64,000 bases of DNA, taken from contig CM106586.1 of the NCBI GenBank assembly GCA_048013815.1, forward strand, positions 24,180,001-24,244,000, read 5' to 3'. A program made the position numbers and the translations under genes. The DNA is from Setoptus koraiensis (lineage: Eukaryota; Animalia; Arthropoda). Under the pieces are notes generated by a model. The model was not told the DNA's origin, did not search any database, and saw nothing but the letters and a program-made list of their open reading frames with translations. This document shows positions 6,269 to 45,000 of this stretch, one piece after another; position 1 is the stretch's first letter, and each line of letters begins with the position of its first letter.

Positions 6269-6298
6269 CCTCAGAAACAAAAGCTCTGATGGCGCCAT
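6269..6298 (-). CDS. Candidate first exon (MAPSELLFLR) of an unidentified small gene; downstream exons not resolved (region about 5820-6268)
   Basis: aagATGg context followed after exactly 10 codons by a strong donor AGG|GTATGT. No convincing continuation or homology was found. Confidence 0.25.
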
Positions 6299-6761
6299 CT
6301 TTCCAGAACGATTGAATGTCAGTGATATCTATCCAATGGTACTCTTGTTAGTTAATCAAAGATAACCCATTGCTACTATTGATTCTTGATTAAATGAAGT
6401 AACTCAGCTCTACTGGCTTTGTTTCAACCATTCAATCTGATTGTATTTGTATTAAATCAAAGACACGCAATTTAATTTAAATTTAGCAAAGTGGTGTTAA
6501 TTGTTTTATACTGATCAATTTCGCATTTAGCGCGTTAGGTTACTGTACTTGTAACAGGATGATTAATGAACCACGCCGGATTATATAAACAACTATTGAA
6601 TGACGGAAAGACTAACAAGATATCTGTTTACAATATGTTATAGTTCATTGACTGGCGTAGACAGTCTGACATTCTGTTTTATTTGGTGCTGCTCATATGA
6701 GAACCCTTCAATTTTGTGTCTGGAATTGTACAATCAAAATTTGTTTTTTTATAAACCAACC

Positions 6762-6995
6762 ATGGCCCCAGAGGAAATAGATGAAAAAAATAAAAAAACG
6801 GAAAATTTCATCTCCGGAACAGCGATGTTGTCGATAGTGGTTTTAGCTTTATTATTTACCAGTATAGCAAGTATATACATTTTTTATTATCATCTTGATG
6901 ACTCGCACCAGGACACCGATAACTGGATATTTGAGATACGGCGATATGTTAACTATCACTTGAGAATTTTCTTGATTATGGTTGGTCTAAGCTAA
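6762..6995 (+). CDS. Small orphan membrane protein (MAPEEIDEK..., 77 aa), possibly a spliced 5' exon
   Basis: In-frame ATG with caaccATGg context inside ORF 6600-6995, and one clear hydrophobic helix (MLSIVVLALLFTSIASIYIFYY). No family recognised. Confidence 0.35.
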   Translation: MAPEEIDEKNKKTENFISGTAMLSIVVLALLFTSIASIYIFYYHLDDSHQDTDNWIFEIRRYVNYHLRIFLIMVGLS

Positions 6996-7187
6996 ACAAA
7001 ACTGAATCCTTGTTTCGCTAGTTCTATTTTATATTGAATTGGATTTCTTATTCTATTGATTTGTATGTTTGCTTGTTTTTCTTTTATAAACTGTATGGTT
7101 ATCATCATCAACAAGGTTCGCCCCTTTATAGATTGGAGTGACATACAAGGAAGCGCAAGTGGTTGTCTGCTAAGTACAAAAACATTT

Positions 7188-8530
7188 ATGCAAACAACCA
7201 AAACAACCAGAAAATCCAGTGGAAACTCAGCCAACAATGAGCCTGGAAAATGTCCTGTCTGTAGAGAGGATAAACACAGATTGAAGATATTTCATGATCT
7301 ACCGAGGAAAGAGGATGGAAGCATTGACTATGAGTATTCAAGAGAAATGCTTTATGATCTAATGCGCAAGGGTAGACCAATTGTAATTGACGCGCAATTC
7401 AACTATATTTCCATACAAGAATGGCAAATTAAAAAGAATACGGCCACCATAATGGATATTCTTGATTTTTATGCTCGTCATGGCATGATTGAAAAAGTTT
7501 GCCACATTGAAACAAACCTTCGTCCAAAAAGTCTGCAAGGTTTATTCGTTAATTTGTACACCGATAGAAAAAGGCACATCTATGAGAGCTGGTATGCAAG
7601 CTGGTGAGTTTCAGATAATCAAAATCTCACTAAATCTAAATCAATTCTCATTAGTACCTCAACGGATCGGACATTCCTTGCAATGTGAAATACCTTCAAT
7701 TTAACTAACTGAATTTTATCATTCCATACCAACATATTGTCTGAAGGCAAAACTGTCGTCTGTGGTCCAAGAAAATGTTTAGATCTATGTATGATCTGAG
7801 TGAATTAAAATGGTTGCCTCTATCTATGATGGAGATGTCTGGAAGTCAGTCTATTTTGGCTTCATCGCTCAACTCGCAAACACTCACGAAAAATCTTTTT
7901 TCGAATTCGTCGCAGCCTTCGGACAGTTCGGAAGAGCAAGATTTTGTAAACTATAAACGGGTAATTATTATTAATTATACGAGTATTTCATTTCGTAAAT
8001 GCTCTTTATGTTTTGCTTATGTTTTAGAACTACAGCACCAGCATATCTTTACGAATCCTTTCTACTCTAGGTGCCTGCACAAGAGGATGAAAATATGACA
8101 TTTGTTTTTCAAATACAAGGACATTCGAGACTTAGATTATTCGCCAAATGCACTCAATACAAGCCAATTGATTGCTCCAAAGCAGGTAGCAGCCTCGTCA
8201 TCGATCTCAGTCCAAATCAAGCTCGTAAGTCATTTTATTCATCTTACAACTTCGCTCGGTGCTCTTTGCCTTCTTTAATTAGACTAGTATTACCCATGTT
8301 TAATTGGCATCTCGCACATTCAACTCGAACAGCAAACAATCCAACAATTAACGAATGATTGAAAATATCACCATTTTATTGTTATTATTACTTATTTGTA
8401 AAAGTGTTTTACAGCTCGACAACTTGGGTGCTGTCTTACGCAACAACCTGGAGCAACCGAGCTAGTGTCTATAAACATAGGAGGCCAAACGCTACTACTT
8501 GGGGAGAAGAGGCCTACAATTTGGCGATAA
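7188..8530 (+). CDS. Four-exon gene (7188-7603, 7747-7960, 8071-8224, 8415-8530), about 300 aa; CxxC plus a possible divergent NYN/PIN (Regnase-like) domain
   Basis: Three GT-AG introns (phases 2, 0, 1) join ORFs 7056, 7775 and 8071 and a terminal exon into one uninterrupted frame. RPIVID and IMDILDFYARHG resemble Regnase RPIVIDGSN and ILLAVNWFLERG. The start could lie further upstream (7095 or a further exon). Confidence 0.5.
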
Positions 8531-8767
8531 TTCTAACAGGAAGAACCATTTGATTGAAAATTTCGTGGTTTTGTTAGGTGAAACTTGACGTAGAAAAATT
8601 ATGCGGTGTATCTACAGGTGTTTGGGCGTCTTGTTAGAGTGTAAACTTTTATGACCTCGACACTGCAGCTGATATTTATTATTAGTGTGAAACGTACTCT
8701 CAATGATAAACGATTCAATCAACATTTATAATCACTTGAGTCAAAGTCCGTCCACACCGAATAGTTT

Positions 8768-9121
8768 CTAATCTCTTTTGCTGATGATACCATTCAGGGT
8801 TCCATCCTGACTGCATTCATCCATCGTTTCTGTTTTTTCATCACAGTCTTCCATCAATTGATTCAACATAGAGACGATTTCCTTCATCGTAGGAGAATAT
8901 TTAGGCTCGTAACGTATAAGCCTCAGTATTTCTCTCAATTTATCCAGGATTCTTTCTTCAATGCTATCCTCTGATTTTTCCAACGACTTCTTTAATTCCA
9001 TTTCCACGCGAGGCTGAGTCTCTTTGATGCCATTATTATGTGCATCCTTATTGCTCATATCTACTCGTAAATAACGAATAATAGGCGACAGAAGTTTATT
9101 CATTTGCAAATTAATGTTGAT
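8768..9121 (-). CDS. Orphan charged/coiled-coil-like ORF, probably the terminal exon of a small gene
   Basis: 113-aa ORF with protein-like E/K-rich composition, preceded by an in-frame pyrimidine-rich acceptor (ttttctttctgtaag| at 9122). The upstream exon was not securely identified. Confidence 0.35.
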   Translation of the reverse strand: MNINLQMNKLLSPIIRYLRVDMSNKDAHNNGIKETQPRVEMELKKSLEKSEDSIEERILDKLREILRLIRYEPKYSPTMKEIVSMLNQLMEDCDEKTETMDECSQDGTLNGIISKRD

Positions 9122-10188
9122 CTTACAGAAAGAAAAACAAGATTTGAAAAACTTATTTTGGACAATGAGTTATCTTAGTGATTTCAAAGTCTACCTGGCA
9201 AATCAACTCGAAATTTCTTTTTCATTGAGTAATCAATTTGGCGATTGAAATACTATATCTACTCTTGAATATATATTGTGGCGATCAGCTAAGATAAGAT
9301 ATCAAGATAAGGTTGAGAAAGATTGCATCTCAGAGGAAAGTAACAAAATATATATTCTAATACGTATCTAACAACCAGCGTGACATTATGTTGGGCCGGT
9401 AGATAACGGAGCAAGATTCAAAAAAAAACTCTAACTACATCGTAAAATGTAAATACTAGTGAGGTACTCGCAATATTGACTCAAAAGTCAATATCTTCCA
9501 ACGTAGTGTTTTGGATTCAAAAGGCGCCTATTCGCCACAAAATAGTTGAAATAAATAGTTCATTCATTGGATTTTTTCAAGTTTTGTACTTCCAGATCAA
9601 CCAGCCACTTCATGAACGAATCGTGATTGCTCGAATTGAATAACAAATGCGACACGCATCAACACCATGTTACGAATCTACCGATTCATTGGAAAGAGTA
9701 ATTGGGTTCTGGGAAGTGTGACTTGATGAATTTCTCTAGTATTTAGAGTCAACTAGTAACTGACAATCTAACCCTCTATAATGTTTCTGAAGACCCACAA
9801 TTTGTTGGTATCTGAACTGTATTTTGTGGCGAAAGCCTAGACCAGGCCATAGCTCACAGATATTCGCGTATCAAATTGAATAATAGTTATAGTAATAGAA
9901 TAGTGATAATAGTAATAGTTCGATGACAAGATGCATTTCTATAGGCTGCATCGAAATGACCTGCGAATGGATAATCTTTCGTCGCCACACAGTCTGTGTT
10001 TCGAACCTCGAAATTCGAAGCGTGTGTGTCAGTATTTTTGAATGTGCATTTGTGTATTGGCTGTGCCACTCAGCGCCCTCTATCAAAAGTATTGAAAGAG
10101 CCACAACCTCAACCCAATCACATGTTGTGCATTGCTGAATATATCAACGTATTCCAGTTTTACGATTTGCAACTTTATTTCATTTAAG

Positions 10189-11688
10189 ATGCATGAAAAT
10201 ATGGAAGAACCCGTGGAAATTGAATATATTTACGAGAAGCCCGAGGAGAACGACCTCTTCCTCCAGTTTGCCAATGTTTTCGAGAGGTTCTCGCTGCCCA
10301 GTAAAGAGGACCAATCTAAAGAGAACAATGTGGACAATGAGGAGAAGGGGACCGCGGTTACCATTCACCAGGATGAAGATAAAGTTCCGACCCAACCACG
10401 AGTGTCAAAGAAAGAGCTAAAAACTCTCTCTCGTATGACAGTTGCCCAACTCAAACAAAAAGTCGATAGGTCAGAGCTAGTGGAAATGCACGATGTTACA
10501 GCAAAGGATCCATTATTGTTGTTACATTTAAAATCGGCTAAGAACTCGGTACCAGTACCGAAACATTGGTGCTTCAAACGCAAATATTTGCAAGGCAAAA
10601 GAGGCTACGAAAAACCTCCGTTTGTGCTGCCTGATTTTATTAGGAGGACAGGTATCATGGAAATGAGACAAGCAGTGCAAGAGAAGGATGATAACAAGAC
10701 ACTTAAATCGAAGATGCGTGAAAAGATTCGCCCTAAAATGGGAAAGATTGAAATAGATTATCAAAAATTACATGATGCATTCTTCAAGTGGCAAGTCAAA
10801 CCTCGGCTTACCATTCATGGGGATCTTTATTATGAGGGCAAAGAATTCGAGACTAGGCTTAAAGAGAAGAAACCTGGAGAGCTCAGCTCAGAACTACGAG
10901 CCGCGTTAGGGATGCCCACAGGTCCAAATGCCAATAAATGCCCACCTCCATGGCTCATAGCCATGCAACGTTATGGGCCGCCTCCGTCATATCCGCATCT
11001 TAGAATTCCTGGTCTCAATTGTCCCATACCTGAAGGATGCTCATTTGGTTACCATGCCGGTGGATGGGGAAAACCACCAGTTGATGAACTTGGTCGACCT
11101 CTCTATGGTGATGTCTTCGGTTTATCGCAGGACGATAATGACCATTTGAGAGAAGAAACTGTAGATACTACTCTTTGGGGCGAGCTAGAATCTGATGAAG
11201 AAGAAGACGATCAAGACATGGAGGAAGAAGATATGATAGAAGAGAAGGTTCAAATGATCAAACCACCGTTGGACACCAAGTCCGAGGACACCGGCGGACT
11301 TGTCACTCCTTTGGGGGCAATACCAAGTGGTATCGTATCCGTGCCTGCGGGTGTTCAAACTCCAGATCTTATAGAACTTCGTAAACGAACGGCCAAGATA
11401 GAACAAGAGATGGAAATGGGAGAAAATCCATCACTCTATAAGTTACTTCCTGAAAGGAAGGTGGAAGAATTTGGCATGGAGAGGATGCCATCTGCTTTCA
11501 TATACGACACTAGTGCACTGAAAAAGCAAGACAATACATCAATGAAGGACCCCGAATCAAATAGGCATGATGTCGATCTACAGAAAGACGATATCACTGT
11601 AAAAAGTCCCAAGAGATTGCCTCAGAAAGGTAGTGAAAAAGTCAAGAAATTAGAAGAGATGAAGGAGAAAGAGTTTAAGAAATTCTGA
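10189..11688 (+). CDS. SF3B2: Splicing factor 3B subunit 2 (SAP145/Cus1), intronless over this span, N-terminally shortened
   Basis: Motifs VEMHDVTAKDP, VPVPKHWCFKRKYLQGKRG, IDYQKLHDAFFKWQ, the PSP domain PPPWLIAMQRYGPPPSYP, GYHAGGWGKPPVDE, and C-terminal KEFKKF. The start is placed at ATG 10189; the ORF-track start at 10132 is a non-ATG codon. Confidence 0.95.
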   Translation: MHENMEEPVEIEYIYEKPEENDLFLQFANVFERFSLPSKEDQSKENNVDNEEKGTAVTIHQDEDKVPTQPRVSKKELKTLSRMTVAQLKQKVDRSELVEMHDVTAKDPLLLLHLKSAKNSVPVPKHWCFKRKYLQGKRGYEKPPFVLPDFIRRTGIMEMRQAVQEKDDNKTLKSKMREKIRPKMGKIEIDYQKLHDAFFKWQVKPRLTIHGDLYYEGKEFETRLKEKKPGELSSELRAALGMPTGPNANKCPPPWLIAMQRYGPPPSYPHLRIPGLNCPIPEGCSFGYHAGGWGKPPVDELGRPLYGDVFGLSQDDNDHLREETVDTTLWGELESDEEEDDQDMEEEDMIEEKVQMIKPPLDTKSEDTGGLVTPLGAIPSGIVSVPAGVQTPDLIELRKRTAKIEQEMEMGENPSLYKLLPERKVEEFGMERMPSAFIYDTSALKKQDNTSMKDPESNRHDVDLQKDDITVKSPKRLPQKGSEKVKKLEEMKEKEFKKF

Positions 11689-11853
11689 TGAGACCAAAGC
11701 TTAGATTGATGAAAAAGTTGTACATAAGATTCAAGGCAGTCCATCTCAACCTATTATTGCCGATAATATTTGAGTTCCTAGATGTAGGATGGTTATTAAT
11801 TTTGTATTGATGTATGCCTTTATTCACAACATATAGGCTATTGAGTAGGTTAA

Positions 11854-13032
11854 TCATAAGTTATACTTCAACAACATTATAAACATGGATATGGAAATCT
11901 GCAAATAAAGGAGATGCTTAGTCAATATTTTCTCGTGCTTTGGCCCGAACCAGCACAACCAAACGTTGATGAGAGTGAAATTTGAACACCTGTAGTTTTG
12001 TTGTCCCCTATTTCCAGTAAATCTTTCCATCTTTGTGAGTTTTAAGTTTGCGAAAACGGTTATGACGAATCGACCTAGGGGATTCAAATCGGTCCATTTG
12101 AATTCGAAAGTGGACGGGTTCAATAGACCACTTTGTTGGTCGAATCTGGGCAACCGATGTCTAGGGCATGGTACAATCTTGCTAATCTGGGGAAATGATA
12201 ATAAAAAGTTCAATATTTGCGGTACGGCAAACAACAGAATCTCCTCAGAGAAATGTCCCAGAATCCCAACAACGGCTAGCGTCATTCCGGCGAAATAACA
12301 AAATGAATCACCAACAAATACTCTGGCAGGATACCAGTTATAATAGAGTAGTGCCATACTACAACTTGTAAATGGAAGGAGAAGTTTGATAGAGAAAAGA
12401 TGTAATCCATCCACTTGGATCGATAATTCTAATATATTATAGATTATCACGGACATTGCGATGACGACACTTTGACCAGATTCCAATCCATTGATGCCAG
12501 CATAAATATTGATGGCATTTGTGCAGAACACTACATACATCAGCATGTATATATAGTAGAACAGTCCTAGGTCTAAATGAGCATTTAAATTTAGATAATT
12601 CCTCAAGAATGAGGGTACCAGAATTGTAGTATTATCATGATAGTTATAGTAATAAACCGATAACAGAGGTATAGAGGCAGCAAAAGGTAACATCAGCTTG
12701 TATCTCCATTTAAGATCTTTGCAATCATCAATAAAACCCAACATGAGCATGGCAAATATAGATGTCAGGGCGGCTAAATTACTATATTTGTCTTTGAAGT
12801 GCTCATTTGAATAATATGGTCTTATCAAGAAGCATAATATGAAAGTCACTAAATAACAGGATCCTACGACAATACCCAAAGATTCGGGTATCCTAGGTTT
12901 TCCTTTTTTGGCCAAGTCCATTCCATAAAGAGCTGTGTTTTTCAAAAAATAATTAGCAACCGGTGGTATAAAGGCCCACGTGAGTGCACCGCCCATCAGG
13001 AATGATCCTACACATATCCATAATTCATTCAT
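11854..13032 (-). CDS. DPAGT1: UDP-GlcNAc:dolichyl-phosphate GlcNAc-1-phosphate transferase (ALG7), intronless
   Basis: Multi-pass membrane protein with GFIDDCKDL, NAINIYAGINGLE, FVGDSFCY and PCPRHRLP motifs. The first in-frame ATG after the GTG start is at 13032 (MNELW). Confidence 0.95.
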   Translation of the reverse strand: MNELWICVGSFLMGGALTWAFIPPVANYFLKNTALYGMDLAKKGKPRIPESLGIVVGSCYLVTFILCFLIRPYYSNEHFKDKYSNLAALTSIFAMLMLGFIDDCKDLKWRYKLMLPFAASIPLLSVYYYNYHDNTTILVPSFLRNYLNLNAHLDLGLFYYIYMLMYVVFCTNAINIYAGINGLESGQSVVIAMSVIIYNILELSIQVDGLHLFSIKLLLPFTSCSMALLYYNWYPARVFVGDSFCYFAGMTLAVVGILGHFSEEILLFAVPQILNFLLSFPQISKIVPCPRHRLPRFDQQSGLLNPSTFEFKWTDLNPLGRFVITVFANLKLTKMERFTGNRGQQNYRCSNFTLINVWLCWFGPKHEKILTKHLLYLQISISMFIMLLKYNL

Positions 13033-13622
13033 TCTTCGTTGATTCCAAAAATAAATAAATATAATAATAATACAGTAGAAACGGTGAGTTTCTTTTGCGT
13101 GAACCACACGGAATGCACCAATGAACGTCATTTGAGCTACGAGAAGCATTTGTTCGAGCACTGCGAAAGCATGCGAACAAATTTCACAGTAGACATATGA
13201 CGATTAATTGCTAACAAGTTGCATGACTGCATGCGCCAGTTTGATCTCTCTTTCTCCATGTCAGAATTTCAATTATTATTAATGAAATAAAGACGACGAT
13301 CGATTACCATTTGAAAGATTTTACATCAGCCTAAATGGACATGGGTCGTCGTCTATTGCTGAGGTCCCATCGCTATTTAATAATTCAAAGGGAAATATTT
13401 GAGGTAGTGATGCTAGATATCTAGGCTGCTTGGAGAGTAATGTGTATAGCCTGAGCTTCAGGAACCAACACTTGCTCGGGACAGCTTTCTAGAAAAAGTG
13501 ATTTGTAGAATGGGGATAAGCATAGTCACACTGAAAAGCAGAGGAATATTCGAGAATTGCACCAAACCATTGATGTTTGAATGAAGCAAACTGATATACT
13601 AAACTCCGAGAAAATGGTCGAG

Positions 13623-13649
13623 AGACACTTAAATCAAAAATGCGTGAGA
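13623..13649 (+). pseudogene. Short relic resembling SF3B2 coding sequence (TLKSKMRE)
   Basis: agacacttaaatcaaaaatgcgtgaga matches SF3B2 10697-10723 at 24/27 nt, with all three mismatches at synonymous third positions. Flanking similarity is weak. Confidence 0.3.
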
Positions 13650-13783
13650 GTTAGCCTACCCACCCGTTTAATTCACTTAACTTTACTGAACTAGCAGACA
13701 TTCCTTCATTTTGAATGAGAATGACAATGAGACATGTGCATTTATGTTGGATGCAGTTTAGGTCTATAGCTGTGATGGGACTT

Positions 13784-15633
13784 TCACTTAGACCCATCAT
13801 CATCTTCATCCTGATATTCGGACACGTATAGTGATTTGTCAATCACTCTTGGTATAGCCTTGATCTCCGTTCCCAACTCTTGTTCTACACGATGAAGGTT
13901 GAATCTATCTTCGTAAGTGATCAAGTTAATGGCTATACCGAGGTGACCAAATCTTCCAGAACGACCAATTCTATGGAGATAAGTTTCGGACATCTTTGGA
14001 AAGTCAAAATTTATGACAACGTTAACTGCTTGAATGTCTATACCACGAGTGAAAAGGTCTGTGAGGGATATATAATTGTAAATTTGTAGGTTAGTGGACA
14101 AGTGCGAGATCGATGAAATGTGTTCGTAACTATCGGATCGTAAAAATAATCATACCTGAACAGACTAGATTTCTGCATAGACCGTTGCGGAAATCGTGGA
14201 AGACACGGTTACGATGAGGTTGTGACATCTTGGCGTGGATATAGTAGCAGGAGTAACCTAACTCCGCAATCTTCTTAGCGAGTAACTCGACGCGTTGCGT
14301 TGAATTGCAAAATATTATCGATTGGTTGATTTGTAACTTTGAGAATAATGTGTTCAGGCAATGCACCTTCTGCTTTTCTTGAACATAAGCGTAGTATTGT
14401 GTGACTCCTTTCAAGGTCAATTCTTCCATTAAGTTGATTTCGTATGGTCTCTTGGTACTGAGGTGCTTGTCCTGAAGATATTATCGGGAAGGAGTGATAT
14501 AAAGTGGAAAAGGTGATGTCAGGTGAATTGATGTTTTTAGAAACAATGGATAAAACAAGTAGATTGAATCGAAACAGATGAATAGGTAAACACTCATACA
14601 AAGTGGTAAGGTAGAGTATCGTCAGTGCCGACCTCATGCCGGTGTCTGTAGCAGAACTGGTTAAGATTATAATCATCGTATTTCTCCCATGTCATCTGTG
14701 GACAAACTAGTTCTGAAGTGGGCGCGCTGGAGTCTGATACTTACCACAAATTGACGCACTGTAAGAGGGAAAGTAGCTGAGAATAGAAGTATCTGCCTGT
14801 CAGGGGGCAGTAGCGATATTACATTGTCCAACATTCCGGAAAAATCTTGAGATAGCAATTTATCAGCCTGTAGTGTGAAGATTTAACATAATTTAGTCAG
14901 AATTAGAAACTCGAACATCGCTTCGCTATGCTGTCACGGGCTCAATCGAATGGTAGAGACTCACTTCATCTAGGACGAGCATTTTACAATTGTTCATCTG
15001 AGCAACTTTCTTTTCCATAAGATCTAGAATACGACCGGGGGTGGCTATGATAACGTGAACTGTGGAGGAATTTGTGAAGATTTTTAAGATGAATACGAGG
15101 GTGCAGGAGGAGAGACAATGACAACATTTAGAGAATGTTTTAAACCGGGGATGGATAGCGAAAACAACTGTCTATGAGTATGACAACTAACCGTTGTCGT
15201 AGATGCGCATGATATCATCTTTGAGATTTGTTCCACCAGTTGTGGCCATCACTCTAGCTCCGAGATGCTTTGACAACTCAATACATATCTGACTGGTTTG
15301 GAGAGCCAATTCCCTGGTAGGTACAATAATGAGAGCTTGAATGTCATTGATAGATGTGTTTATCTTCTGTAGAATGGGGATAACGTAAGCACCGGTTTTA
15401 CCGGTACCGTTCTTGGCTCGAGCTAATACATCTTGGCCCAATAATGAAATAGGTATACTGGCCTCTTGAATGGGTGATGGCTTTTCCCAGCCTTTCTCAA
15501 ATATACCCATTAGTAACTCGCGCTTCAAACAGAGATCTTCAAATTCTTGGCCTTTGGTGGCCGTGACGTCGGTGGTTTTTTTACGCCTATCCTTGGGCGG
15601 CATTTTAACAAGCGATCTTAATTGTACGTCCAT
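13784..15633 (-). CDS. DDX6: DEAD-box RNA helicase DDX6/Me31B/Dhh1; 5 exons (15633-15192, 15059-14965, 14867-14745, 14471-14156, 14058-13784), 416 aa
   Basis: Motifs [32 protein letters not shown] (DEAD across a splice junction), SAT, RGID and HRIGRSGR. Four canonical GT-AG introns give a 1251-nt frame. Confidence 0.96.
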
Positions 15634-15973
15634 TTTAATCTAGTGATATTTTTTATATATTGTTGTTGCTGAATGTGTTATATATTTTATATTACTATAA
15701 TTAATCTTTGATTACAATGGGTCTCGTCACTAAGATTTTCTGGATACAATTATGTGTCTCTTGTACAATATTATACTGGTTGTGATCTGATTTCTTTTTC
15801 TTGTTCTTCTTGTTCTTGTATATAATAATTATCATTTATCTATTGGATAATTCTTTAGATCGCCAATCGTAGAATGCTTCAATATACTGCGGCGTTACAT
15901 TTATATTATGTGTGCATGTGTGCGATGCAGTTAGCGACTATGTTAAATATACACAAAAACACATACTTTTATA

Positions 15974-16114
15974 TAGGGTGATTAAATCAATCCACCCAAT
16001 TCTACAGCGACTATGCTAGCATGGCCTTTGTAGCGCATTTCTTGCACAGAAAAATGTATTGTTTGTTAGGCACAGCATGGCCGAAATCATGAACGTTTGC
16101 TTGGAAACACCCTA
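15974..16114. mobile_element. Possible degenerate Tc1/mariner-type MITE within the palindrome arm (mirror copy about 17312-17452)
   Basis: Termini TAGGGTG...CACCCTA with TA on the left flank; the mirror copy ends in CAGGGTG, a common mariner-like terminus. TIR identity beyond 7-10 nt is poor. Confidence 0.3.
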
Positions 16115-16331
16115 TGTTCAAAGAGAGCACACACTCTCTATATACGTCTGTCTCATTTCCTCTTTTATCTAAGCTTCAACAATGTTATATTTGCTCATTT
16201 CTAGTCTACAACTCGTAACAGCAGCCAAAAAGCAGCGATCAACAAAAATGCTTCAATTCTCAATACACACATATACTCGCGTACACACACACATTGCCTC
16301 GTATGCATGCGATGTTTGTCCGTACAAGCTA

Positions 16332-16402
16332 TGCTGGATCGCGGTTTACGTCCCGCGGATTGTGCCGTTCCGCGTCGTTTCCGCGGCTGCCGCGATCCAG
16401 CA
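16332..16402. other. GC-rich branched hairpin
   Basis: Perfect 13-bp stem TGCTGGATCGCGG (16332-16344) / CCGCGATCCAGCA (16390-16402) enclosing further CCGCGG(A)/TCCGCGG inverted motifs. Confidence 0.7.
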
Positions 16403-16419
16403 CACTACAAAGCACACTA

Positions 16420-16729
16420 AAGAGGTGGGCACTGATACCCGTGGCGTATACCCGACCCGGTTGAAATTTCTTTCCACAAACCCAACCCGTACCCGGCCAG
16501 TGAAAAAAAATTGACAAATTCGACGGGAGTGCACAGATGGTCAATGAGAACCCGTGAGTCTCAAAGCCCCGAGGATTTCTCTGCGGATGTTTACGAAATT
16601 TTGGAATTCTGGAATTCGATCCGTGCACCTTCCCTGGCTAGGATCATCAATAAACAGCCGACCCAAACCCTTACATGTGGGGTATCCGCGCGAATCGCCC
16701 CAGCGGAGAGGCATCCGTGCCTACCTCTA
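16420..16729. mobile_element. Non-autonomous hAT-like element (MITE, about 310 bp) in the palindrome spacer
   Basis: TIRs AGAGGTGGGCAC (16421-16432) / GTGCCTACCTCT (16717-16728). Degenerate 8-bp target-site duplication gcacacta / ccacactt (6/8). ACCCG/ACCCA subterminal repeats at both ends. Confidence 0.6.
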
Positions 16730-17653
16730 CCACACTTGCAAAGAATAGAAAGAGTAAAGAAAGTTTACACACACACACACAGACACGCTAACCAATGGAT
16801 GTGATCGAATTCGGGTGCAAACTGTATGGTGACCAAGTACTTTTGAGTTCTGCGCGGCAATAAGCATGCATTGAATTTATCAAAGTGCGCACTGAGCCTA
16901 AACTTGATTCTTTTTCGCCTTCAATGCGCTTACTAAATGAACTTTTTGTGCCGAAAAATTGTTATTGCCGCACAGAGCTCAAACGTATACCTGGTCACCC
17001 TTCATCATGTAGGCTGCATGGTGGTAAGCGACACTGTCGGACAGTGCACGAAAAGGTGCGCCCTCTAGTTTCGCACAATCAGAAAGGTTTTCGGACTGCC
17101 GCACTTTCACATATTGCGTGCATACGAGGCAAAGAGTCTGTGTACGCGAGTATATGTGTGTATTGAGAATTGAAGCATTTTTGTTGATCGCTGCTTTTTG
17201 GCTGCTGTTACGAGTTGTAGACTAGAAATGAGCAAATATAACATTGTTGAAGCTTAGATAAAAGAGGAAATGAGACAGACGTATATAGAGAGTGTGTGCT
17301 CTCTTTGAACATAGGGTGTTTCCAAGCAAACGTTCATGATTTCGGCCATGCTGTGCCTAACAAACAATACATTTTTCTGTGCAAGAAATGCGCTACAAAG
17401 GCCATGTTAGCATAGTCGCTGTAGAATTGGGTGGATTGATTTAATCACCCTGTTCATAAATATGTGTTCTTGTTCTTAAAGAAGCATTCTAGTTTGGTAA
17501 TCAAGAGGATTATCTAATAGTTCAAAGATAATTATTATAGGCAAACAACGTGAAAGAGGAATAAGGTCAGAATCAGCATAACACTGCGCAGGAGTCACGC
17601 AATCAGAGAACACGTGCATCAACAACAATATACAAAATTATTATAAGGTTGAA

Positions 17654-18175
17654 ATGGACGCGCAATTAAGATCACTAGTTAAATTGCATCTTATTATAAC
17701 ACGCTCTATATCCTCCACCAGCGTCTTGAATGGCACCCCTAAAAGAAGAGTCACAATTGAAAGAAGATTAAGGAGGAGATACGGTGACCAAAATATGCCT
17801 ACTGGCAGTCTCTTATTGCACTCCAAAAATAATATATTAGTATGCGGTAAATGCGGATCATATCACGAGGCCCATACCATTTGTAATAACTGTTACGATT
17901 TGATTAGAAAGGAGACACTGCCTATCATCGAGTCAATCAGAGAAGCACAAGGTTCCGATGCCATCACAAAAGAGGTCCTGTTGAGGTATAAAGGCGATCA
18001 AGTGGACCACTCACAGTATGCCAATCTGCAAATTGTTGAGACAGAAAGAACCAGACCATTGTGGTTCACAGATAATCTCTTAAAAAGGAAAGCTCTACCC
18101 GGCACCAATACCGAAACGGACCCGGCTGTTAGTGCAAATGACAACCTTATAAAAGTTATACCGGATAATAAATGA
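17654..18175 (+). CDS. MRPL32: Mitochondrial ribosomal protein bL32m, intronless
   Basis: R/S/L-rich presequence-like N-terminus, PKRRVTIERRLRRR, and the zinc site CGKCGSYHEAHTICNNC, followed by the typical EVLLRYKG and RPLWF segments. Confidence 0.88.
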   Translation: MDAQLRSLVKLHLIITRSISSTSVLNGTPKRRVTIERRLRRRYGDQNMPTGSLLLHSKNNILVCGKCGSYHEAHTICNNCYDLIRKETLPIIESIREAQGSDAITKEVLLRYKGDQVDHSQYANLQIVETERTRPLWFTDNLLKRKALPGTNTETDPAVSANDNLIKVIPDNK

Positions 18176-18259
18176 ATTGAGTTCATTGCAGTAGTCATAA
18201 TCATACAATTTGCTATTTTTTCCAGATGGTACTCTTCTGTTTTTTATATTTGCAGTTAG

Positions 18260-19093
18260 TTAGGTGGCTTTTGGAGTCTTGACTTCTTTTTTAGTAATAC
18301 TCTCCATGATCATGCAGATGGTCTTGTGCTTCGACACTAACTCATCCAGAGAAAAGAAGCCACTATCAGTCTTGATGGCTTTCACATGACCTGCTATCAG
18401 TGCGTCCGCGGCCGTCCAAGATTTTTCATCACTGGGATTGAAGTTTCTACGTTGCACAAGATCAGACTCTAGTTTGTTAAGAAATGACTCAAAATCGCTC
18501 AATATATTACTCTTTTCATCTGTGAATTTTTTCTGCATCTCTACTCTTTTAAACCAAAATAATATATGATTGAGCGGCCAGGCTAATTTGTAAGTATATC
18601 TGGGAAATGTGTACTCTTGAAGAGTCTGTTTCTGACACCAGCAACTGAACATTTCTACTTTTAAAAAGTTTGATTCTATCCAATCAATATAAGCTCGAGA
18701 TTCCGCATCCAAAATTCGAGGATTAAAATTCTCCAAAGAAACTTTTTGTTGCTTTGTAGCTGATTTCGTTTGAGAATGCAAATAAGTTGCAACCTCTTCA
18801 AAACCGCACAATATCCTGGTTCCTCGCCTAACCAGCGGCAATTTCCCATTAGTTGACATGTATTCTGCATTCTTCACCTTCATGAGAACACATTCGATGT
18901 CTGATATCTTGAATAAGGCATTAACACTCTCACTACTGGCTAGGTCATACAATAATATTTGAGATGGCAGTGGCTGATATAATTCGCATTTGTCCGTCCA
19001 TTGCTCGTGGTTGTCGGGTAAACACTGAAGAATATTTCTCACTTGTGTGTCAACTCGTTCCTGTTTACTGCTAGCAGAGTCATCATTTTCCAT
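18260..19093 (-). CDS. MTX2: Metaxin-2 (SAM complex, GST-like fold), intronless, with a chimeric N-terminus
   Basis: LYQPLPSQILL, NAEYMSTNGKLP and RYTYKLAWPLNHIL match metaxin-2 motifs (LYQQLKGEQILL, NAEYMSPSGKVP, YPWPLNHIL). Confidence 0.88.
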   Translation of the reverse strand: MENDDSASSKQERVDTQVRNILQCLPDNHEQWTDKCELYQPLPSQILLYDLASSESVNALFKISDIECVLMKVKNAEYMSTNGKLPLVRRGTRILCGFEEVATYLHSQTKSATKQQKVSLENFNPRILDAESRAYIDWIESNFLKVEMFSCWCQKQTLQEYTFPRYTYKLAWPLNHILFWFKRVEMQKKFTDEKSNILSDFESFLNKLESDLVQRRNFNPSDEKSWTAADALIAGHVKAIKTDSGFFSLDELVSKHKTICMIMESITKKEVKTPKAT

Positions 19094-19766
19094 AATTATC
19101 CAATAATGGTAATTCTAATAATTAATGAATACTTTGATCAATCGAAAGTCGAATTGCCTAAAGGACGAAATATAAATGGGTGGGAAATGGCTCCCTGAGC
19201 GCGGTGTGCATTCGCACAAAAATAATTTTAGTAGTATAGCATGCACAGAGAGCATGTGACACAGATTGTGATTGTATTTCAGAAACATAGGGAAAGCACC
19301 ACAGTCAAACATCTACATAAATCATTATTAGAATCAAAATGTTACCATTATTTTTTATTTTACTAGATATTCAATAAAACCGCTGGACGTGAGACCTTTC
19401 AAATGCTGATGTCTTTTTAATCAGATTGATATTAGGTTAAGTATTAGTAGTAGTAGTATTGGAATTGCGGATTCAGAATTATTTCGAATAATTATGGAAA
19501 ATGATGATTCTTCCGACGTTGTACAGGACCACATTACAATCAATGGAACCGTCAATAATATATCTGTTAGTCAGACTAATATGGATAGCTCATCTTCATC
19601 CTATGTGAGAGAATTCAATTCTTTGTTTAAGCCTCTGAATCCTGTCCAATTGCGGGATAGAGCATTGGCAGGAGGCTTGAGAAATTCCAAATTTAGAAGT
19701 TTATGTTGGAGATATTTTCTTCAATGTCTCCCGGACAACTATGAGCAATGGCTGGAAAAATGTGAA
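18983..19766. repeat. Diverged, internally deleted inverted duplication joining the MTX2 and TBC1D5 5' ends
   Basis: 19099-19076 (rc) vs 19488-19511 match at 23/24 nt across both ATGs. 19039-18983 (rc) vs 19710-19766 match at 45/57 nt. 19122-19100 (rc, tattagaattaccattatt) vs about 19326-19352 match apart from a short insertion. Confidence 0.9.
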
Positions 19767-21515
19767 ACTGATAGAAAAGAGTATCAGAGATTAAGAGACG
19801 AGCACGCCTTTGATCCAAGACAAGTGAATCACCCAATTGTAGAGAATAATCCTCTTTCTCAAGATGAGAATAGTCCATGGAATCAATATTTTGCTGATAC
19901 CAACCTGAGGAACGTTATAAAACAAGATGTCATACGCACATATCCAGATATGGAATTTTTTCGTAGCACTGAAATTCAATCTATTCTATCGAATGTATTG
20001 TTTCACTTCGCACGAGAGAACTCTAAATTATCATACAAGCAGGGAATGCACGAATTATTAGCCTCGTTACTATTTGTCCTGTACCAAGATGTGCAAACCT
20101 GTATCATTGCAAATGAAGGCGGTCTTGCCAATGATGATATAGCATCATTGCTCAACATAAATTACATAGAGCATGACGTATATATGGCATTCAGTCAATT
20201 GATGCAAACCATAGAAACCTGGTATCAAAATGATGAAATTCTACCTCCTCCGGCGGATGAAACCAATCCAACTGGCAAAGTCCAGAATAAATACCATGTC
20301 AGATCAGTGTTGGGCCTAAAGTTGAAAATGATCTCAGAGCAAATAGTTAAGAGGCATGATACAGAGCTTTTTAATCACTTGGAGGCGTTACAGATAGCAC
20401 CACAAATTTATGGTATTCGTTGGATGCGTTTACTGTTTGGTAGAGAGTTCCGTTTCACTGATTTGTTAGTTGTTTGGGACGCTATTATTGGTGATGGAAT
20501 ATCCCTTGGTTTGACCGATTATCTTTTTGCTAGTATGCTGTTGACAATTAGAGAACTATTAGTTCATAGTGACTATACTGATTGTTTGAACTTACTGATG
20601 AGGTATCCAGCAGTGAAGGATATTCAAAATGTGATAAAATTTGCTTTGCATCTTAGAGAACCAAACAGGTATCTTCGTCCAAACATAAATCTATCCCATC
20701 TTAGTCATAATCATAAACATCTACAATATTTAGAGTCAAGCAATAGAGGTTTTTCACTTAAAGGTGACTGTGATAAACAGCAGTCATCCTTACCGAATGT
20801 CGTCAACCAACGACAAAATAATACAACCAGTATCAAGTCAATGAAAACCACTGCAAAAAAGTTACAATCTAATGTTAAAAATTTGACAATAACAAGCACA
20901 ACTAACCAGGCCAAACAGAATGATAGCAAAAAGTTACATACAGCACAAGGAACAATCAGTAAACCCGCAATCCAGAGCAATAAGGCCAATCCTACATCAT
21001 CAGTATCAAGTAAAGATAGAGAGACCAACAAACAAAAGTCAGATAGTAGAATTCTCACAAAGGCGACTAATACTAAGGACTTAAGAGGAGTAATAGCCCC
21101 TGACTCAAGCAAGAACATTCATAAGAATATTATTCGAAATAATATAGTTCCTCCTTCGTCATCCCTCACAATCAATAGATCTCACATTAGAGAAATGTAC
21201 TCAATTTCTTCACACAGTTTAGATGACACTGCACCCAATAGCATTGTGACTAAAACAGTGGGGCGCAAATCGACAGCGTCCACAGATTCCTACGACCATG
21301 AGGATCTACATTCAAAAGTTGATTACTGTTGGCGATTGTTGAGTGATCAAATAGATTCTCTTCAGAAATGCTTGCCCAAAGAAAAGAATTTGAATTGTGA
21401 AGACGAGATTTATATAGCATTGGCGCAATTGAAAAAAGTGAGAGATGTTCTCAAAGGTTCCTTAAAATTGGAAGACGAGCTAGAGACACAACCCACAACT
21501 TATAAGAAGGATTAA
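19494..21515 (+). CDS. TBC1D5: TBC1 domain family member 5 (Rab7 GAP, retromer-associated), intronless
   Basis: NNPLSQDENSPWNQYFADTNLRNVIKQDVIRTYP (R-finger), YKQGMHELL (Q-finger), YGIRWMRLLFGREF, LMRYP, and a C-terminal coiled-coil. Confidence 0.93.
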   Translation: MENDDSSDVVQDHITINGTVNNISVSQTNMDSSSSSYVREFNSLFKPLNPVQLRDRALAGGLRNSKFRSLCWRYFLQCLPDNYEQWLEKCETDRKEYQRLRDEHAFDPRQVNHPIVENNPLSQDENSPWNQYFADTNLRNVIKQDVIRTYPDMEFFRSTEIQSILSNVLFHFARENSKLSYKQGMHELLASLLFVLYQDVQTCIIANEGGLANDDIASLLNINYIEHDVYMAFSQLMQTIETWYQNDEILPPPADETNPTGKVQNKYHVRSVLGLKLKMISEQIVKRHDTELFNHLEALQIAPQIYGIRWMRLLFGREFRFTDLLVVWDAIIGDGISLGLTDYLFASMLLTIRELLVHSDYTDCLNLLMRYPAVKDIQNVIKFALHLREPNRYLRPNINLSHLSHNHKHLQYLESSNRGFSLKGDCDKQQSSLPNVVNQRQNNTTSIKSMKTTAKKLQSNVKNLTITSTTNQAKQNDSKKLHTAQGTISKPAIQSNKANPTSSVSSKDRETNKQKSDSRILTKATNTKDLRGVIAPDSSKNIHKNIIRNNIVPPSSSLTINRSHIREMYSISSHSLDDTAPNSIVTKTVGRKSTASTDSYDHEDLHSKVDYCWRLLSDQIDSLQKCLPKEKNLNCEDEIYIALAQLKKVRDVLKGSLKLEDELETQPTTYKKD

Positions 21516-44087: not shown

Positions 44088-44445
44088 AAGATTACTAATT
44101 AAATCGCATCTTATCATAACACGCTCTATATCCTCCACTTGCGTTTCGAAAGACACCTCAAAAAGAAGAGTCACAGATGAAAGAAAAATTAGGAGGAGAT
44201 ACGGTGACCAAAACGTGCCTACTGGCAGCCTCTTATTGCACTCCAAAGATAATATATTAGTATGCGGATCATATCACGAGGCCCATACCATTTGTAATAA
44301 CTGTTACGATTTGATTAGAAAGGAGACACTGCCTATCATCGAGTCAATCAGAGAAGCAAAAGAGATACTGTTACAAAAGAGGTCCTGTTGAGGTATAAAG
44401 GTAAACAAGTGGACCACTCACGGACTCTAGTCATAATCATACAAT
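44088..44445 (+). pseudogene. Degraded copy of MRPL32 (and its 3' flank)
   Basis: Aligns to 17668-about 18210. It lacks the ATG, has a 9-nt deletion removing KCG from the CGKC zinc motif, carries frameshifts, and has a deletion of about 170 bp at the 3' end. Confidence 0.92.
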
Positions 44446-44489
44446 TTGCTATTATGCCAGATGATGCTTTTCGTTTTTTCATATTTTCA

Positions 44490-44960
44490 GTTAGTTAGTT
44501 TAGAGTCTAGTTTCTGACACCAACAACTAAACATTTCCCCTTTAAAAATATTTGATTCTATCCAATAAGCTCGAGATTCCGCATCCAAAATGCGAGGATT
44601 AAAATTCCCCGAAGAAACTTTTTGTTGCTTCGTAGCTGATTTCGTTTGAGAAAGTAAAAAAGTTGCAACCTCTTCAAAACCGCACAATGTCGTGGTTCCT
44701 TATCTAACCAGCGGCAATTTCCCATTAGTTGACATGTATTCTGCATTCTTCACCTTCATGAGAACACATTCGATGTCTGATATCTTGAATGAGGCATTAC
44801 TACTCTCACTACTGGCCGGGTCACACAATAATATTTGAGATGGCAGTGGCTGATATAATTCGCATTGCTCGTGGTTGTCGAATAAACCGAATCGAAGAAT
44901 ATTTCTCACTTGTATGTCAACTGGTTCCTGTATACTGCTAGCAGAGTCATCATTTTCCAT
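44490..44960 (-). pseudogene. Degraded copy of metaxin-2
   Basis: Aligns to 18260-19093 (MENDDSASS...NAEYMSTNGKLPLVR*), with a premature stop, frameshifts, and a deletion of about 350 bp of the 3' half. Confidence 0.92.
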
Positions 44961-45000
44961 AATTATCTAATGATGGTACTGTCGATAATTAATTAATAAT

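What the first reader, a model, noticed from the sequence alone, without database searches (positions are those of the whole stretch)
6269..19766. Candidate system: head-to-head genes repeatedly acquire their promoter and start codons from the neighbour by fold-back (inverted) duplication
Seen: in this 14-kb block, two divergent gene pairs (DDX6/MRPL32, MTX2/TBC1D5) clearly share inverted copies of 5' flank, ATG and first codons, and two more pairs (6.3/6.8 kb, 9.0/10.2 kb) show weaker traces. The cases look to be of different ages. Established: unrelated bidirectional-promoter genes normally share no coding sequence. Fold-back junctions near replication origins are described in yeast (ODIRA-type models), and origins often lie at housekeeping promoters. 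Inference: promoter-centred fold-back events are a recurrent way of building new gene 5' ends in this lineage. One economical history is that the tail-to-tail MRPL32-MTX2 block, both mitochondrial genes, was placed between DDX6 and TBC1D5 and each end was given a new 5' end by an inverted copy of its neighbour.
Basis: partly seen in the sequence, partly recalled or inferred. Interest (0 to 1): 0.85.

Follow-up and report, generated by a model that had tools for sequence, protein, structure and literature searches.

The report
Two genes re-headed by neighbours' flipped starts
In this gall-mite genome, two mitochondrial housekeeping genes (MRPL32 and a metaxin) begin with flipped partial copies of the front ends of their head-to-head neighbours (DDX6 and TBC1D5). 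These are two separate events of a rare but known kind, which seems to recur unusually often in this genome.

Summary
Partly confirmed. Two of the four claimed pairs are real; the two "weaker traces" are chance.

- **Pair A.** About 0.6-0.7 kb of DDX6's upstream DNA, its ATG and first ~12 codons (15600-16325) lie inverted at 17093-17690 and supply MRPL32's start. DDX6 is the donor: its N-terminus is kept in 17 of 22 other eriophyoid DDX6 variants, and three contigs with readable upstream DNA show SF3B2 as the neighbour, not MRPL32. A relative (L001) has an MRPL32 with a different N-terminus and no right arm.
- **Arm identity.** The outer arms are 78% alike. A 313-nt core is 312/313 identical, which points to recent arm-to-arm gene conversion.
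- **Pair B.** Metaxin codons 1-12 and 19-37 are in-frame copies of TBC1D5 codons 1-12 and 73-91, the start of the TBC domain. The copy is also in L001, is transcribed, and is under purifying selection (dN/dS 0.13).
- **Not an artefact.** Two DNA runs filed under different studies give a matching contig graph, with 2x depth on the core.
- **History.** The two events differ in age. The single "block insertion" history is not supported.
- **Mechanism.** A fold-back or template switch is inferred, not shown.

The scan noted at least 14 similar pairs elsewhere in this genome; I could not check those notes.

The parts
13651..15633 (-). DDX6/Me31B-type DEAD-box helicase gene, the donor of event A. 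Exon 1 is the ORF 15187-15633, with the ATG at 15633. The lower limit 13651 is only the end of the lowest listed minus-strand ORF in this stretch; the true 3' end of the gene was not determined.
   Evidence: Pfam DEAD hit. 94-96% protein identity to eriophyoid DDX6 first exons. An unspliced RNA contig covers 15400-15905. The N-terminus MD[VIA]QLRS.VKMPPKD, or a close variant of it, is kept in 17 of 22 other DDX6 sequence variants.
15600..16325 (.). Left arm, the source copy: DDX6 codons 1-12, the ATG, the leader and upstream DNA.
   Evidence: Arm-to-arm alignment. Identity by section: outer part 185/236 = 78%; core 15975-16287 312/313; inner edge 28/38.
15975..16287 (.). Near-identical core tract of the left arm. 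Its partner on the right arm is 17139-17451.
   Evidence: 312/313 identical, with one mismatch at 16019. In DNA runs X1 and X4 it forms a separate 313-nt contig at twice the single-copy depth. The single-copy orthologue in L001 is only ~86-93% identical, so the arms were homogenised recently.
16326..17092 (.). Centre (spacer) of palindrome A. It holds a stretch with no counterpart in the relative's shorter spacer (16324-16750), a conserved piece (16751-16822) and a small inverted-repeat element (~16826-17000).
   Evidence: Unique contig 16258-17168 in X1 and X4, with loose ends showing partial copies elsewhere in the genome. L001 matches only 16751-16822 here, at 86%. Inverted repeat I6.
17093..17690 (.). 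Right arm: the inverted copy of the DDX6 5' region, now the 5' flank, ATG and first ~12 codons of MRPL32.
   Evidence: Homology between L001's MRPL32 and the window resumes at 17688, the outer edge of the arm. Run X8 holds 84% of the sampled words of 17480-17745; its kind is unlabelled but its coverage looks like RNA.
17654..18175 (+). MRPL32 (mitochondrial ribosomal protein bL32m), single ORF, the recipient of event A.
   Evidence: Pfam Ribosomal_L32p. 208 homologues found, none matching residues 1-9. L001's orthologue starts MIHHQAIKLSQRLL... and is 18 residues longer.
18260..19093 (-).
   Evidence: Pfam Tom37 and GST_N_4, starting at residues 57-70. 93% identical to the L001 orthologue over the full length, including the N-terminus. 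An unspliced RNA contig covers 18751-19147.
18983..19099 (-). TBC1D5-derived head of the metaxin gene: 19059-19099 (6 nt upstream, the ATG and codons 1-12) and 18983-19040 (codons 19-37), joined by 18 nt of unassigned origin.
   Evidence: dN/dS between the window and L001 is 0.13 for codons 1-37.
19100..19487 (.). Spacer between metaxin and TBC1D5. No mirrored similarity is left in it.
   Evidence: Self-inverted alignment is no better than shuffles (165 of 300 as good). 78% identical to the L001 spacer. RNA contigs end at 19147 and begin at 19384.
19488..19766 (+). Source segments in TBC1D5: 19488-19528 (ATG and codons 1-12) and 19709-19766 (codons 73-91, the start of the TBC domain).
   Evidence: The Pfam RabGAP-TBC domain starts at residue 67. 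Alignments.
19494..21515 (+). TBC1D5-like RabGAP gene, single ORF, the donor of event B.
   Evidence: Pfam RabGAP-TBC residues 67-342. The orthologous N-terminus is present in L001.

Best explanation
Two separate local inverted partial duplications each copied the front end of one gene onto its head-to-head neighbour. The neighbour is an unrelated single-copy gene, and the copy replaced its original start.

**Event B (older)**
- A flipped copy of the TBC1D5 5' end was fused in frame to the metaxin gene.
- What survives is the ATG with codons 1-12 and codons 73-91. The 60 codons between were lost or never copied.
- It is translated as a 37-residue N-terminal extension under purifying selection.

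**Event A (about as old as the split from relative L001, and absent from that relative's MRPL32)**
- A flipped copy of ~0.6-0.7 kb was pasted onto MRPL32 at codon ~12. It carries DDX6 upstream DNA, the leader, the ATG and ~12 codons.
- It replaced ~390 nt holding MRPL32's old upstream DNA and the first ~29 codons of its mitochondrial presequence.
- The arms then diverged to ~78% identity. A 313-nt core was later re-homogenised by arm-to-arm gene conversion (312/313).

**Shown:** the duplications, their direction, their relative ages, their presence in DNA runs from different studies, transcription of three of the four 5' ends, and constraint on the metaxin head.

**Inferred:**
- The events arose by fold-back or template switching at a break or stalled fork in the divergent promoter region.
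- The copied DNA drives MRPL32 transcription.
- The DDX6-derived residues work as part of MRPL32's import signal.
For: - **Inverted homology, far above shuffles:**
- **Direction of event A.**
  - MD[VIA]QLRS.VKMPPKD, or a close variant, is present in 17 of 22 other eriophyoid DDX6 variants.
  - Where the upstream gene could be read, DDX6's neighbour is SF3B2 (L002, L004, L008). No MRPL32, metaxin or TBC1D5 match was found on any of these contigs.
  - L001's MRPL32 has a different, longer N-terminus. L001 carries one copy of the core, in left-arm orientation, collinear with the centre piece and MRPL32. Homology resumes at 17688.
  - No MRPL32 homologue among 208 matches residues 1-9.
- **Direction of event B.** The copied piece is the start of the TBC domain, whose Pfam match begins at residue 67.
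- **Age of event B.**
  - It is present in L001.
  - By hand count on the 57-nt sequences printed, orthologous pieces are ~86-90% identical and paralogous pieces 79-82%.
  - The spacer has lost its mirror symmetry.
- **Constraint.** dN/dS is 0.13 for metaxin codons 1-37, with dS 0.68.
- **Not an artefact.** Runs X1 and X4 come from different studies and give the same contig graph, with a 2x-depth 313-nt core and unique junction contigs.
- **RNA.** Run X7 has unspliced contigs over the DDX6, metaxin and TBC1D5 starts, plus a poly(A)-type tail. Run X8 holds 84% of the words of the MRPL32 leader and start.
- **Gene conversion.** The core is 312/313 between arms, against 86-93% to the orthologue, with sharp drops to 74-78% on both sides.
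Against: - **MRPL32 start not shown on RNA.** No RNA contig in X7 covers the MRPL32 ATG; its contigs start at 17739. The conserved residues SVLNGTPKRR lie upstream of the next in-frame ATG.
- **Age of event A is ambiguous.** Outer-arm identity (78%) equals the between-species spacer identity (78%). Event A could therefore slightly predate the split and have been lost in L001, rather than postdate it.
- **Neighbour in L001 unseen.** L001 ends inside the core-like sequence, so I could not see whether DDX6 is MRPL32's neighbour in that relative.
- **No promoter copy shown for pair B.** No mirrored upstream DNA survives there, so 'promoter capture' is not shown for that pair.
- **Mechanism unreadable.** Junction microhomology has decayed, so the mechanism cannot be read from the sequence.
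Confidence: 0.72

Rival explanations
1. The duplicates are by-products of small inversions made by staggered breaks (Ranz et al. 2007 model). The sequence between two offset nicks is filled in and ends up, inverted, at both ends of the inverted segment. Here that segment would be only the 0.4-0.8 kb spacer.
For: - In Drosophila, 17 of 29 inversions carry inverted duplications of non-repetitive sequence at their breakpoints (median 321 bp, up to ~1.9 kb, ~88% identity; PMC1885836). These sizes match the arms here.
- Gene order and orientation around DDX6 differ among eriophyoid contigs. SF3B2 is head-to-head with DDX6 in L002 and L004, in tandem in L008, and two genes away in the window. Small rearrangements are therefore common in this group.
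- Scan notes describe other cases where the arms enclose whole genes (unchecked).
Against: - For pair A, the left arm, the 16751-16822 piece and MRPL32 are collinear with L001, so the centre is not inverted relative to the outgroup.
- The old MRPL32 5' end, which an inversion would keep, is not found in the centre.
- Saving the model needs an extra flip plus a deletion.
- In the two-sided version of the model, the DDX6 copy and the TBC1D5 copy would sit at the opposite ends of the MRPL32-metaxin block from where they are.
Confidence: 0.15
2. There is no special mutational process. Small inverted partial duplications arise at an ordinary rate everywhere. In a very compact genome, the ones that survive and get noticed are those that land on a gene start and still give a working gene. 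The two cases here, and those elsewhere in the genome, would be survivorship plus an observer's eye for ATG-anchored matches.
For: - Partial and chimeric duplicates, many of them inverted and adjacent, are described as a common class of young duplicate. I take this from the abstract of the review PMC3449122 (listed, body not read) and from general knowledge.
- ~35 kb of related eriophyoid contigs (L002, L008) hold no such repeat.
Against: - In this window's self-BLAST, the only non-trivial inverted repeats whose copies lie within 3 kb of each other are these two pairs. Both sit exactly on divergent gene starts, and they are adjacent to each other.
- The scan lists at least 14 further head-to-head or neighbouring pairs with mirrored starts in the same ~50-Mb genome, but these are unchecked AI notes.
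Confidence: 0.35
3. Palindrome A is an assembly artefact (a chimeric fold-back read), or a transposon with long terminal inverted repeats inserted between the genes.
For: - A 366-nt inverted repeat at 96% around a 789-nt core looks like a fold-back element or a long-read chimera.
- The centre holds repeat-like pieces that have partial copies elsewhere in the genome.
Against: - Two DNA runs from different studies reproduce the junction contigs, and the core is at exactly ~2x depth, so there are two copies in the genome and not many.
- The arms continue outward as diverged homology (72-80%) into the DDX6 reading frame. Neither an artefact nor a transposon would do this.
- The relative has the core as a single copy at the same locus.
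Confidence: 0.02

Closest known systems
Chimeric genes formed by partial gene duplication with a recruited 5' end (Drosophila and C. elegans literature; review PMC3449122; example PMC1463047). Both papers were seen only as titles and abstracts.
   Same: A fragment holding another gene's upstream DNA, start codon and first codons is fused in frame to unrelated coding sequence. The donor gene stays intact.
   Different: By general knowledge, the recipient in those cases is usually a spare duplicate that becomes a new gene. Here the recipient is the only copy of an essential housekeeping gene, whose own start was overwritten. The donor is the immediate head-to-head neighbour, and the copy is inverted in place.
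Fold-back inverted duplications with a short single-copy spacer (human germline; Hermetz et al. 2014, PMC3907307; title and abstract only)
   Same: Two inverted arms lie next to each other, separated by a short spacer (0.4-0.8 kb here). A break followed by intrastrand pairing or a template switch is the natural way to make this layout.
   Different: By general knowledge, the human events are large, terminal, and tied to deletions and dicentric chromosomes. Here the arms are 0.1-0.7 kb, interstitial and fixed. Junction microhomology, the model's signature, has decayed and cannot be checked.
Inverted duplications at inversion breakpoints from staggered breaks (Ranz et al. 2007, PMC1885836)
   Same: Inverted copies of unique, often genic sequence of a few hundred base pairs, associated with rearrangement-prone spots. 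Identity and size ranges match.
   Different: In that model the copies flank an inverted segment. In pair A the sequence between the arms is collinear with the outgroup, and the displaced old 5' end is missing.
Arm-to-arm gene conversion in genomic palindromes (for example sex-chromosome palindromes; from general knowledge)
   Same: A sharply bounded, near-identical tract (312/313) lies inside older, diverged arms. The arms are more alike than the orthologues are.
   Different: The scale is a few hundred bases in a promoter region. It is not a multi-kilobase ampliconic gene palindrome.

Membership tests
Chimeric gene by partial 5' duplication (5'-end capture) | The recipient's 5' end is homologous to another gene's 5' end, including the start codon, and is in frame. 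| tested here: met
   Pair A: 15600-15679 vs 17609-17687 at 80%, with the same ATG and ~11 codons. Pair B: 41 nt and 58 nt in frame.
Chimeric gene by partial 5' duplication (5'-end capture) | The donor keeps an intact gene, and the shared segment is native to the donor. | tested here: met
   The DDX6 N-terminus, or a close variant, is present in 17 of 22 other variants. The upstream genes that could be read on those contigs differ from the window's. The shared TBC1D5 piece lies inside the Pfam RabGAP-TBC domain.
Chimeric gene by partial 5' duplication (5'-end capture) | Orthologues of the recipient lack the captured segment. | tested here: inconclusive
   MRPL32: met for the one close relative (L001), and no other homologue matches residues 1-9. 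Presequences are poorly conserved anyway. Metaxin: the only orthologue found (L001) has the segment. Its absence in distant metaxins rests on the Pfam domain limits and on my memory of human MTX2.
Chimeric gene by partial 5' duplication (5'-end capture) | The chimeric 5' end is transcribed with the gene body. | tested here: inconclusive
   Metaxin: yes, an unspliced RNA contig covers 18751-19147. MRPL32: the X7 contigs start at 17739.
Fold-back inverted duplication | Adjacent inverted arms separated by a short spacer, two copies only. | tested here: met
   Spacers of ~770 nt and 388 nt. The core is at 2x depth.
Fold-back inverted duplication | Short inverted microhomology at the fold-back junction. 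| not testable with these tools
   The arm edges are 74-78% identical with indels, so the original junctions cannot be recovered.
Staggered-break inversion duplication (Ranz 2007) | The copies flank a segment that is inverted relative to an outgroup. | tested here: not met
   For pair A, L001 is collinear with left arm, then 16751-16822, then MRPL32. Pair B has no outgroup that lacks the duplication.
ODIRA (origin-dependent inverted-repeat amplification) | An inverted triplication containing a replication origin. | tested here: not met
   Depth of the core is 2x, not 3x, and there are only two arms. Origin activity cannot be tested here.
Transposon with long terminal inverted repeats / fold-back element | Multiple copies in the genome, with mobile ends unrelated to the flanking genes. 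| tested here: not met
   Only two copies. The arms run into the DDX6 coding sequence. A single-copy orthologous core sits at the same locus in L001.
Palindrome arm-to-arm gene conversion | A sharply bounded tract that is more similar between arms than between orthologues. | tested here: met
   312/313 between the arms, against 126/136 aligned positions (86% counting gaps) to L001. The flanks are 78% and 74%.

The most novel reading that the evidence does not exclude
Eriophyoid (gall) mites may have a lineage-specific, promoter-centred fold-back or template-switch process. It would repeatedly overwrite the start of one gene of a head-to-head pair with a flipped copy of its partner's promoter, leader, ATG and first codons. 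Essential single-copy genes would be 're-headed' again and again. Neighbours would come to share regulatory DNA, kept alike by gene conversion. N-terminal signals, such as mitochondrial presequences, would be rebuilt from unrelated proteins.
Probability: 0.35. Interest if true: 0.8.

Novelty: new variant of a known kind. Interest (0 to 1): 0.6.

Why it matters
If the pattern holds genome-wide, it would be a little-described route of gene evolution. Instead of making new genes, local inverted duplication replaces the promoter and N-terminus of existing essential genes with those of the neighbour.

- It would explain how genes survive rearrangement breakpoints in a genome with tiny intergenic regions.
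- It would create pairs of unrelated genes with identical upstream DNA, giving a natural experiment in co-regulation.
- It would show that a mitochondrial presequence (MRPL32) and a conserved N-terminal extension (metaxin) can be built from pieces of a helicase and a RabGAP.

For annotation, it warns that N-terminal similarity between neighbouring unrelated genes in these genomes is real and should not be 'corrected'.

Tried and rejected
- **Weak pairs.** 6266/6600 and 9109/10189 are no better than dinucleotide shuffles.
- **Transposon or assembly artefact for palindrome A.** Rejected on depth, on contigs from runs of different studies, and on the arms running into coding sequence.
- **Both-ends staggered inversion of the MRPL32-metaxin block.** The copies sit at the wrong ends of the block for this model.
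- **Mirror symmetry left in the pair B spacer.** None found.
- **Relic of the old MRPL32 5' end in the centre of palindrome A.** Not found, even with word size 7.
- **The relative's DDX6 5' contig, to see whether DDX6 neighbours MRPL32 there.**
  - Cluster members and four more contig look-ups gave other species or no DNA.
  - L009 and L010 do not overlap L001.
- **Solved structures for the metaxin.** No hit at E 1e-3.
- **Inverted repeats in relatives' contigs L002-L010.** None beyond L001's own copy of event B.
- **Literature.**
  - I found no paper describing this pattern in eriophyoid mites.
  - The published 34-Mb two-chromosome eriophyoid assembly has an N50 of 17.4 Mb. This window lies more than 21 Mb into its piece, so it is probably a different genome.
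- Read laying was given 4,501 letters.

Full report
**What is in the sequence**

The block holds these genes:
- SF3B2 (+, ~10.2-11.7 kb)
- DPAGT1 (-, 11.85-13.16 kb)
- DDX6 (-, ATG at 15633)
- MRPL32 (+, 17654-18175)
- a metaxin (-, 18260-19093)
- a TBC1D5-like RabGAP (+, 19494-21515)

All were identified by Pfam. Most are single ORFs, which fits a streamlined mite genome. Earlier notes of the scan call it a gall-mite genome. The nearest protein relatives come from unnamed Logan contigs that I take to be eriophyoid on the strength of those notes.

**Pair A (DDX6/MRPL32)**

- The repeat finder gives a 366-nt inverted repeat at 96% (15953-16318 / 17108-17473). Weaker collinear matches lie further out.
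- BLAST adds 15600-15679 / 17609-17687 at 80%.
- A global alignment shows one continuous inverted homology. It runs from 36 nt inside the DDX6 reading frame (15600) to ~16325, mirrored from 17690 down to ~17093, with several indels.
- The two proteins start [11 protein letters not shown]... and MDAQLRSLVKL....
- Identity along the arms is stepped:

| Section | Identity |
|---|---|
| Outer part | 185/236 (78%) |
| Core 15975-16287 | 312/313 |
| Inner edge | 28/38 (74%) |

**Pair B (metaxin/TBC1D5)**

- 19059-19099 mirrors 19488-19528: ATAATT, then the ATG and 11 codons (MENDDSASSKQE vs MENDDSSDVVQD).
- 18983-19040 mirrors 19709-19766 (RNILQCLPDNHEQWTDKCE vs RYFLQCLPDNYEQWLEKCE).
- Both copies are in frame.
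- The second piece is the start of the RabGAP-TBC domain, whose Pfam match begins at residue 67.
- In the metaxin, 18 nt stand where TBC1D5 has 180 nt.
- The 388-nt spacer keeps no mirror symmetry.

**Is it more than chance?**

- Against dinucleotide shuffles, pair A scores z = 276 and pair B z = 16. None of 300 shuffles reached either score.
- In a self-BLAST of the whole 64 kb, these two pairs hold the only non-trivial inverted repeats whose copies lie within 3 kb of each other.
One gives z = 0.1. The other gives z = 2.3, and its best match is a 14-mer away from both starts.

**Is it real DNA?**

Two DNA runs filed under different studies and organism labels (X1, X4) give the same contig graph:
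- a unique contig up to 16004;
- a 313-nt contig (15975-16287) at twice the single-copy depth (239 vs 119, and 215 vs 114);
- a unique 911-nt contig across the centre that enters both arms;
- a unique contig from 17422.

That is what a two-copy palindrome gives, and it rules out a multi-copy transposon. The diverged outer arms cannot be an assembly artefact.

**Direction and age**

- *DDX6 is the donor of event A.*
  - The DDX6 N-terminus MD[VIA]QLRS.VKMPPKD, or a close variant of it, is found in 17 of 22 other eriophyoid DDX6 first-exon variants.
  - In three contigs where the upstream gene could be read, that gene is SF3B2: head-to-head in L002 and L004, in tandem in L008.
  - No MRPL32, metaxin or TBC1D5 match lies on any of the DDX6 contigs.
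- *What relative L001 shows.*
  - L001 is a 2.8-kb contig from a closer relative, with a metaxin 93% identical (dS ~0.7).
  - It carries TBC1D5-metaxin-MRPL32 in the same order as the window.
  - Its metaxin has the same TBC1D5-derived head, so event B predates the split.
  - Its MRPL32 starts MIHHQAIKLSQRLL... and is 18 residues longer.
  - Upstream of that MRPL32 it has one copy of the core, in left-arm orientation, then a homologue of 16751-16822, then ~390 nt with no counterpart in the window.
  - Homology with the window's MRPL32 resumes at 17688, exactly at the outer edge of the right arm.
- *Age of event A.*
  - The right arm therefore replaced MRPL32's old upstream DNA and about 29 codons of its presequence.
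  - Outer-arm identity (78%) equals the between-species identity of the metaxin/TBC1D5 spacer (78%).
  - Event A is thus about as old as the split. The simplest reading is just after it. Loss in the relative cannot be excluded.
- *Age of event B.* By hand count on the 57-nt sequences printed, orthologous pieces are ~86-90% identical and paralogous pieces 79-82%. This fits a duplication somewhat older than the split.
- *A later copy.* A decayed partial copy of MRPL32, metaxin and DDX6 at 44088-45508 is 88% identical to the source. It begins inside the DDX6-derived codons of MRPL32, so it postdates event A.

**Function**

- *Run X7 looks like RNA.* It covers exons only and carries a poly(A)-type tail at ~18239. 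It has unspliced contigs over three starts:
  - the DDX6 start plus a leader of at least 272 nt (15400-15905);
  - the metaxin start, including the TBC-derived part (18751-19147);
  - the TBC1D5 start (19384-19570).
- *MRPL32 in RNA.* The X7 contigs begin at 17739, so the captured ATG is not covered there. A sister run, X8, holds 84% of the sampled words of 17480-17745, but I had no read-laying run left to look at it.
- *Start codons.* All four ATGs are the first possible start after an in-frame stop.
- *Metaxin head.* Between the window and L001, codons 1-37 have dN/dS 0.13. The rest of the gene has 0.04, and TBC1D5's own N-terminus 0.18. The borrowed head is translated and constrained.
- *MRPL32 head.*
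  - The replaced part lies upstream of the conserved mature region (...LWAVPKRRRS.ERRL). It varies freely among 208 homologues.
  - It is therefore most likely the mitochondrial presequence.
  - The new one is short, basic and rich in Ser/Thr.

**The near-identical core**

The core is 312/313 identical between the arms. Its identity to the single orthologous copy in L001 is only 86% counting gaps, or 93% at aligned positions. Its edges are sharp. Recent arm-to-arm gene conversion explains this best. Selection alone would not make paralogous copies more alike than orthologous ones.

**Mechanism**

The layout is two inverted arms next to each other, with a short spacer, and the copy fused to the neighbour's body. 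That is what a fold-back or template switch at a break or stalled fork would give. The closest documented form is the fold-back inverted duplication with a spacer (PMC3907307).

The main rival is the staggered-break inversion model (PMC1885836). Its duplicates have the right size, and rearrangements around DDX6 are clearly frequent in these mites. Two results in pair A speak against it: the centre is collinear with the outgroup, and the old MRPL32 5' end is gone.

ODIRA predicts a triplication, and the depth here shows two copies. Nothing here tests replication origins. The mechanism remains an inference.

- 'Different ages' is right.
- The single 'block insertion' history is not supported. 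L001 has event B without event A, and in other eriophyoid contigs DDX6 and TBC1D5 are not neighbours.
- 'Promoter capture' is shown as copied upstream DNA only for pair A, and not as promoter function for either pair.
- Recurrence:
  - Two independent events sit 1.3 kb apart here.
  - The scan's notes list at least 14 other neighbouring pairs with mirrored starts in the same genome: PAN3/Sirt1, eIF1/YTHDF, AP-4/E2F, SAP130/Spt5, vasa/actin, NOP2 and SLC30A9 with eIF3b-MRPL22, THOC1/RpS7, PNPase/eIF3g, PSMC4/eIF3i, NEDD8/STAG, PDPK1/PPIL2 and eEF2/RpS24.
  - These are unchecked AI notes. I treat them as leads, not evidence.
  - About 35 kb of contigs from other eriophyoid species showed no further case.

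**Verdict**

These are two real, polarised, dated examples of 5'-end replacement by a flipped copy of the neighbour's front end, one of them with ongoing gene conversion. The kind of event, a chimeric gene made by partial inverted duplication, is known. Its use to re-head essential single-copy genes, and its apparent frequency in this genome, is the unusual part and needs a genome-wide test.

Noticed in passing
window 44088-45508: A decayed partial copy (~88% identical) of MRPL32 (17668-18263), the metaxin 5' half (18621-19134) and the DDX6 3' part (13783-14516), joined in that order. The junction 19134|13783 is what a tandem duplication or a circle of the 13.8-19.1 kb segment would give. The copy holds exact stretches of 97 nt and 87 nt in an otherwise 88% match, which may reflect gene conversion with the live genes.
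   Followed up: partly
window 16324-16750: A GC-rich ~430-nt stretch in the palindrome centre, where the relative L001 has only ~80 unalignable nt. It has a hairpin (16333-16344 / 16389-16400). DNA contigs from elsewhere in the genome partly match it (loose ends at 16329 and 16374). It is probably a repeat insertion.
   Followed up: partly
window 16826-17000: A small inverted-repeat element of ~175 nt (arms 16838-16863 / 16962-16987, 88%), with loose ends in the DNA runs at 16924, 16947 and 16967. It looks like a multi-copy MITE-like insertion.
   Followed up: no
L002 3319-5415; L004 3-1904; L008 8115-10528: In other eriophyoid contigs DDX6 sits next to SF3B2, head-to-head in two samples and in tandem in another, and is followed by a V-ATPase subunit gene in L002-L005 and L008. 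In the window, SF3B2 lies beyond DPAGT1 on DDX6's 3' side. Single-gene flips and moves seem frequent in this group.
   Followed up: partly
window 17126-17383: A low-depth RNA contig specific to the right arm (it contains right-arm variants at 17126-17138). The near-perfect inverted repeat is therefore at least partly transcribed. Its direction, and any hairpin RNA, are unknown.
   Followed up: no
window 15881-15950: About 65-70 nt are present only in the left arm. The DDX6 RNA contigs end inside it, at 15887 and 15905. The region around DDX6's apparent transcript end therefore has no counterpart in the copy that heads MRPL32.
   Followed up: no
window 18239-18247: An RNA contig carries an added T-run at 18239, between the MRPL32 stop (18175) and the metaxin stop (18260). 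It is likely a poly(A) site. The two convergent genes end within ~85 nt of each other.
   Followed up: no
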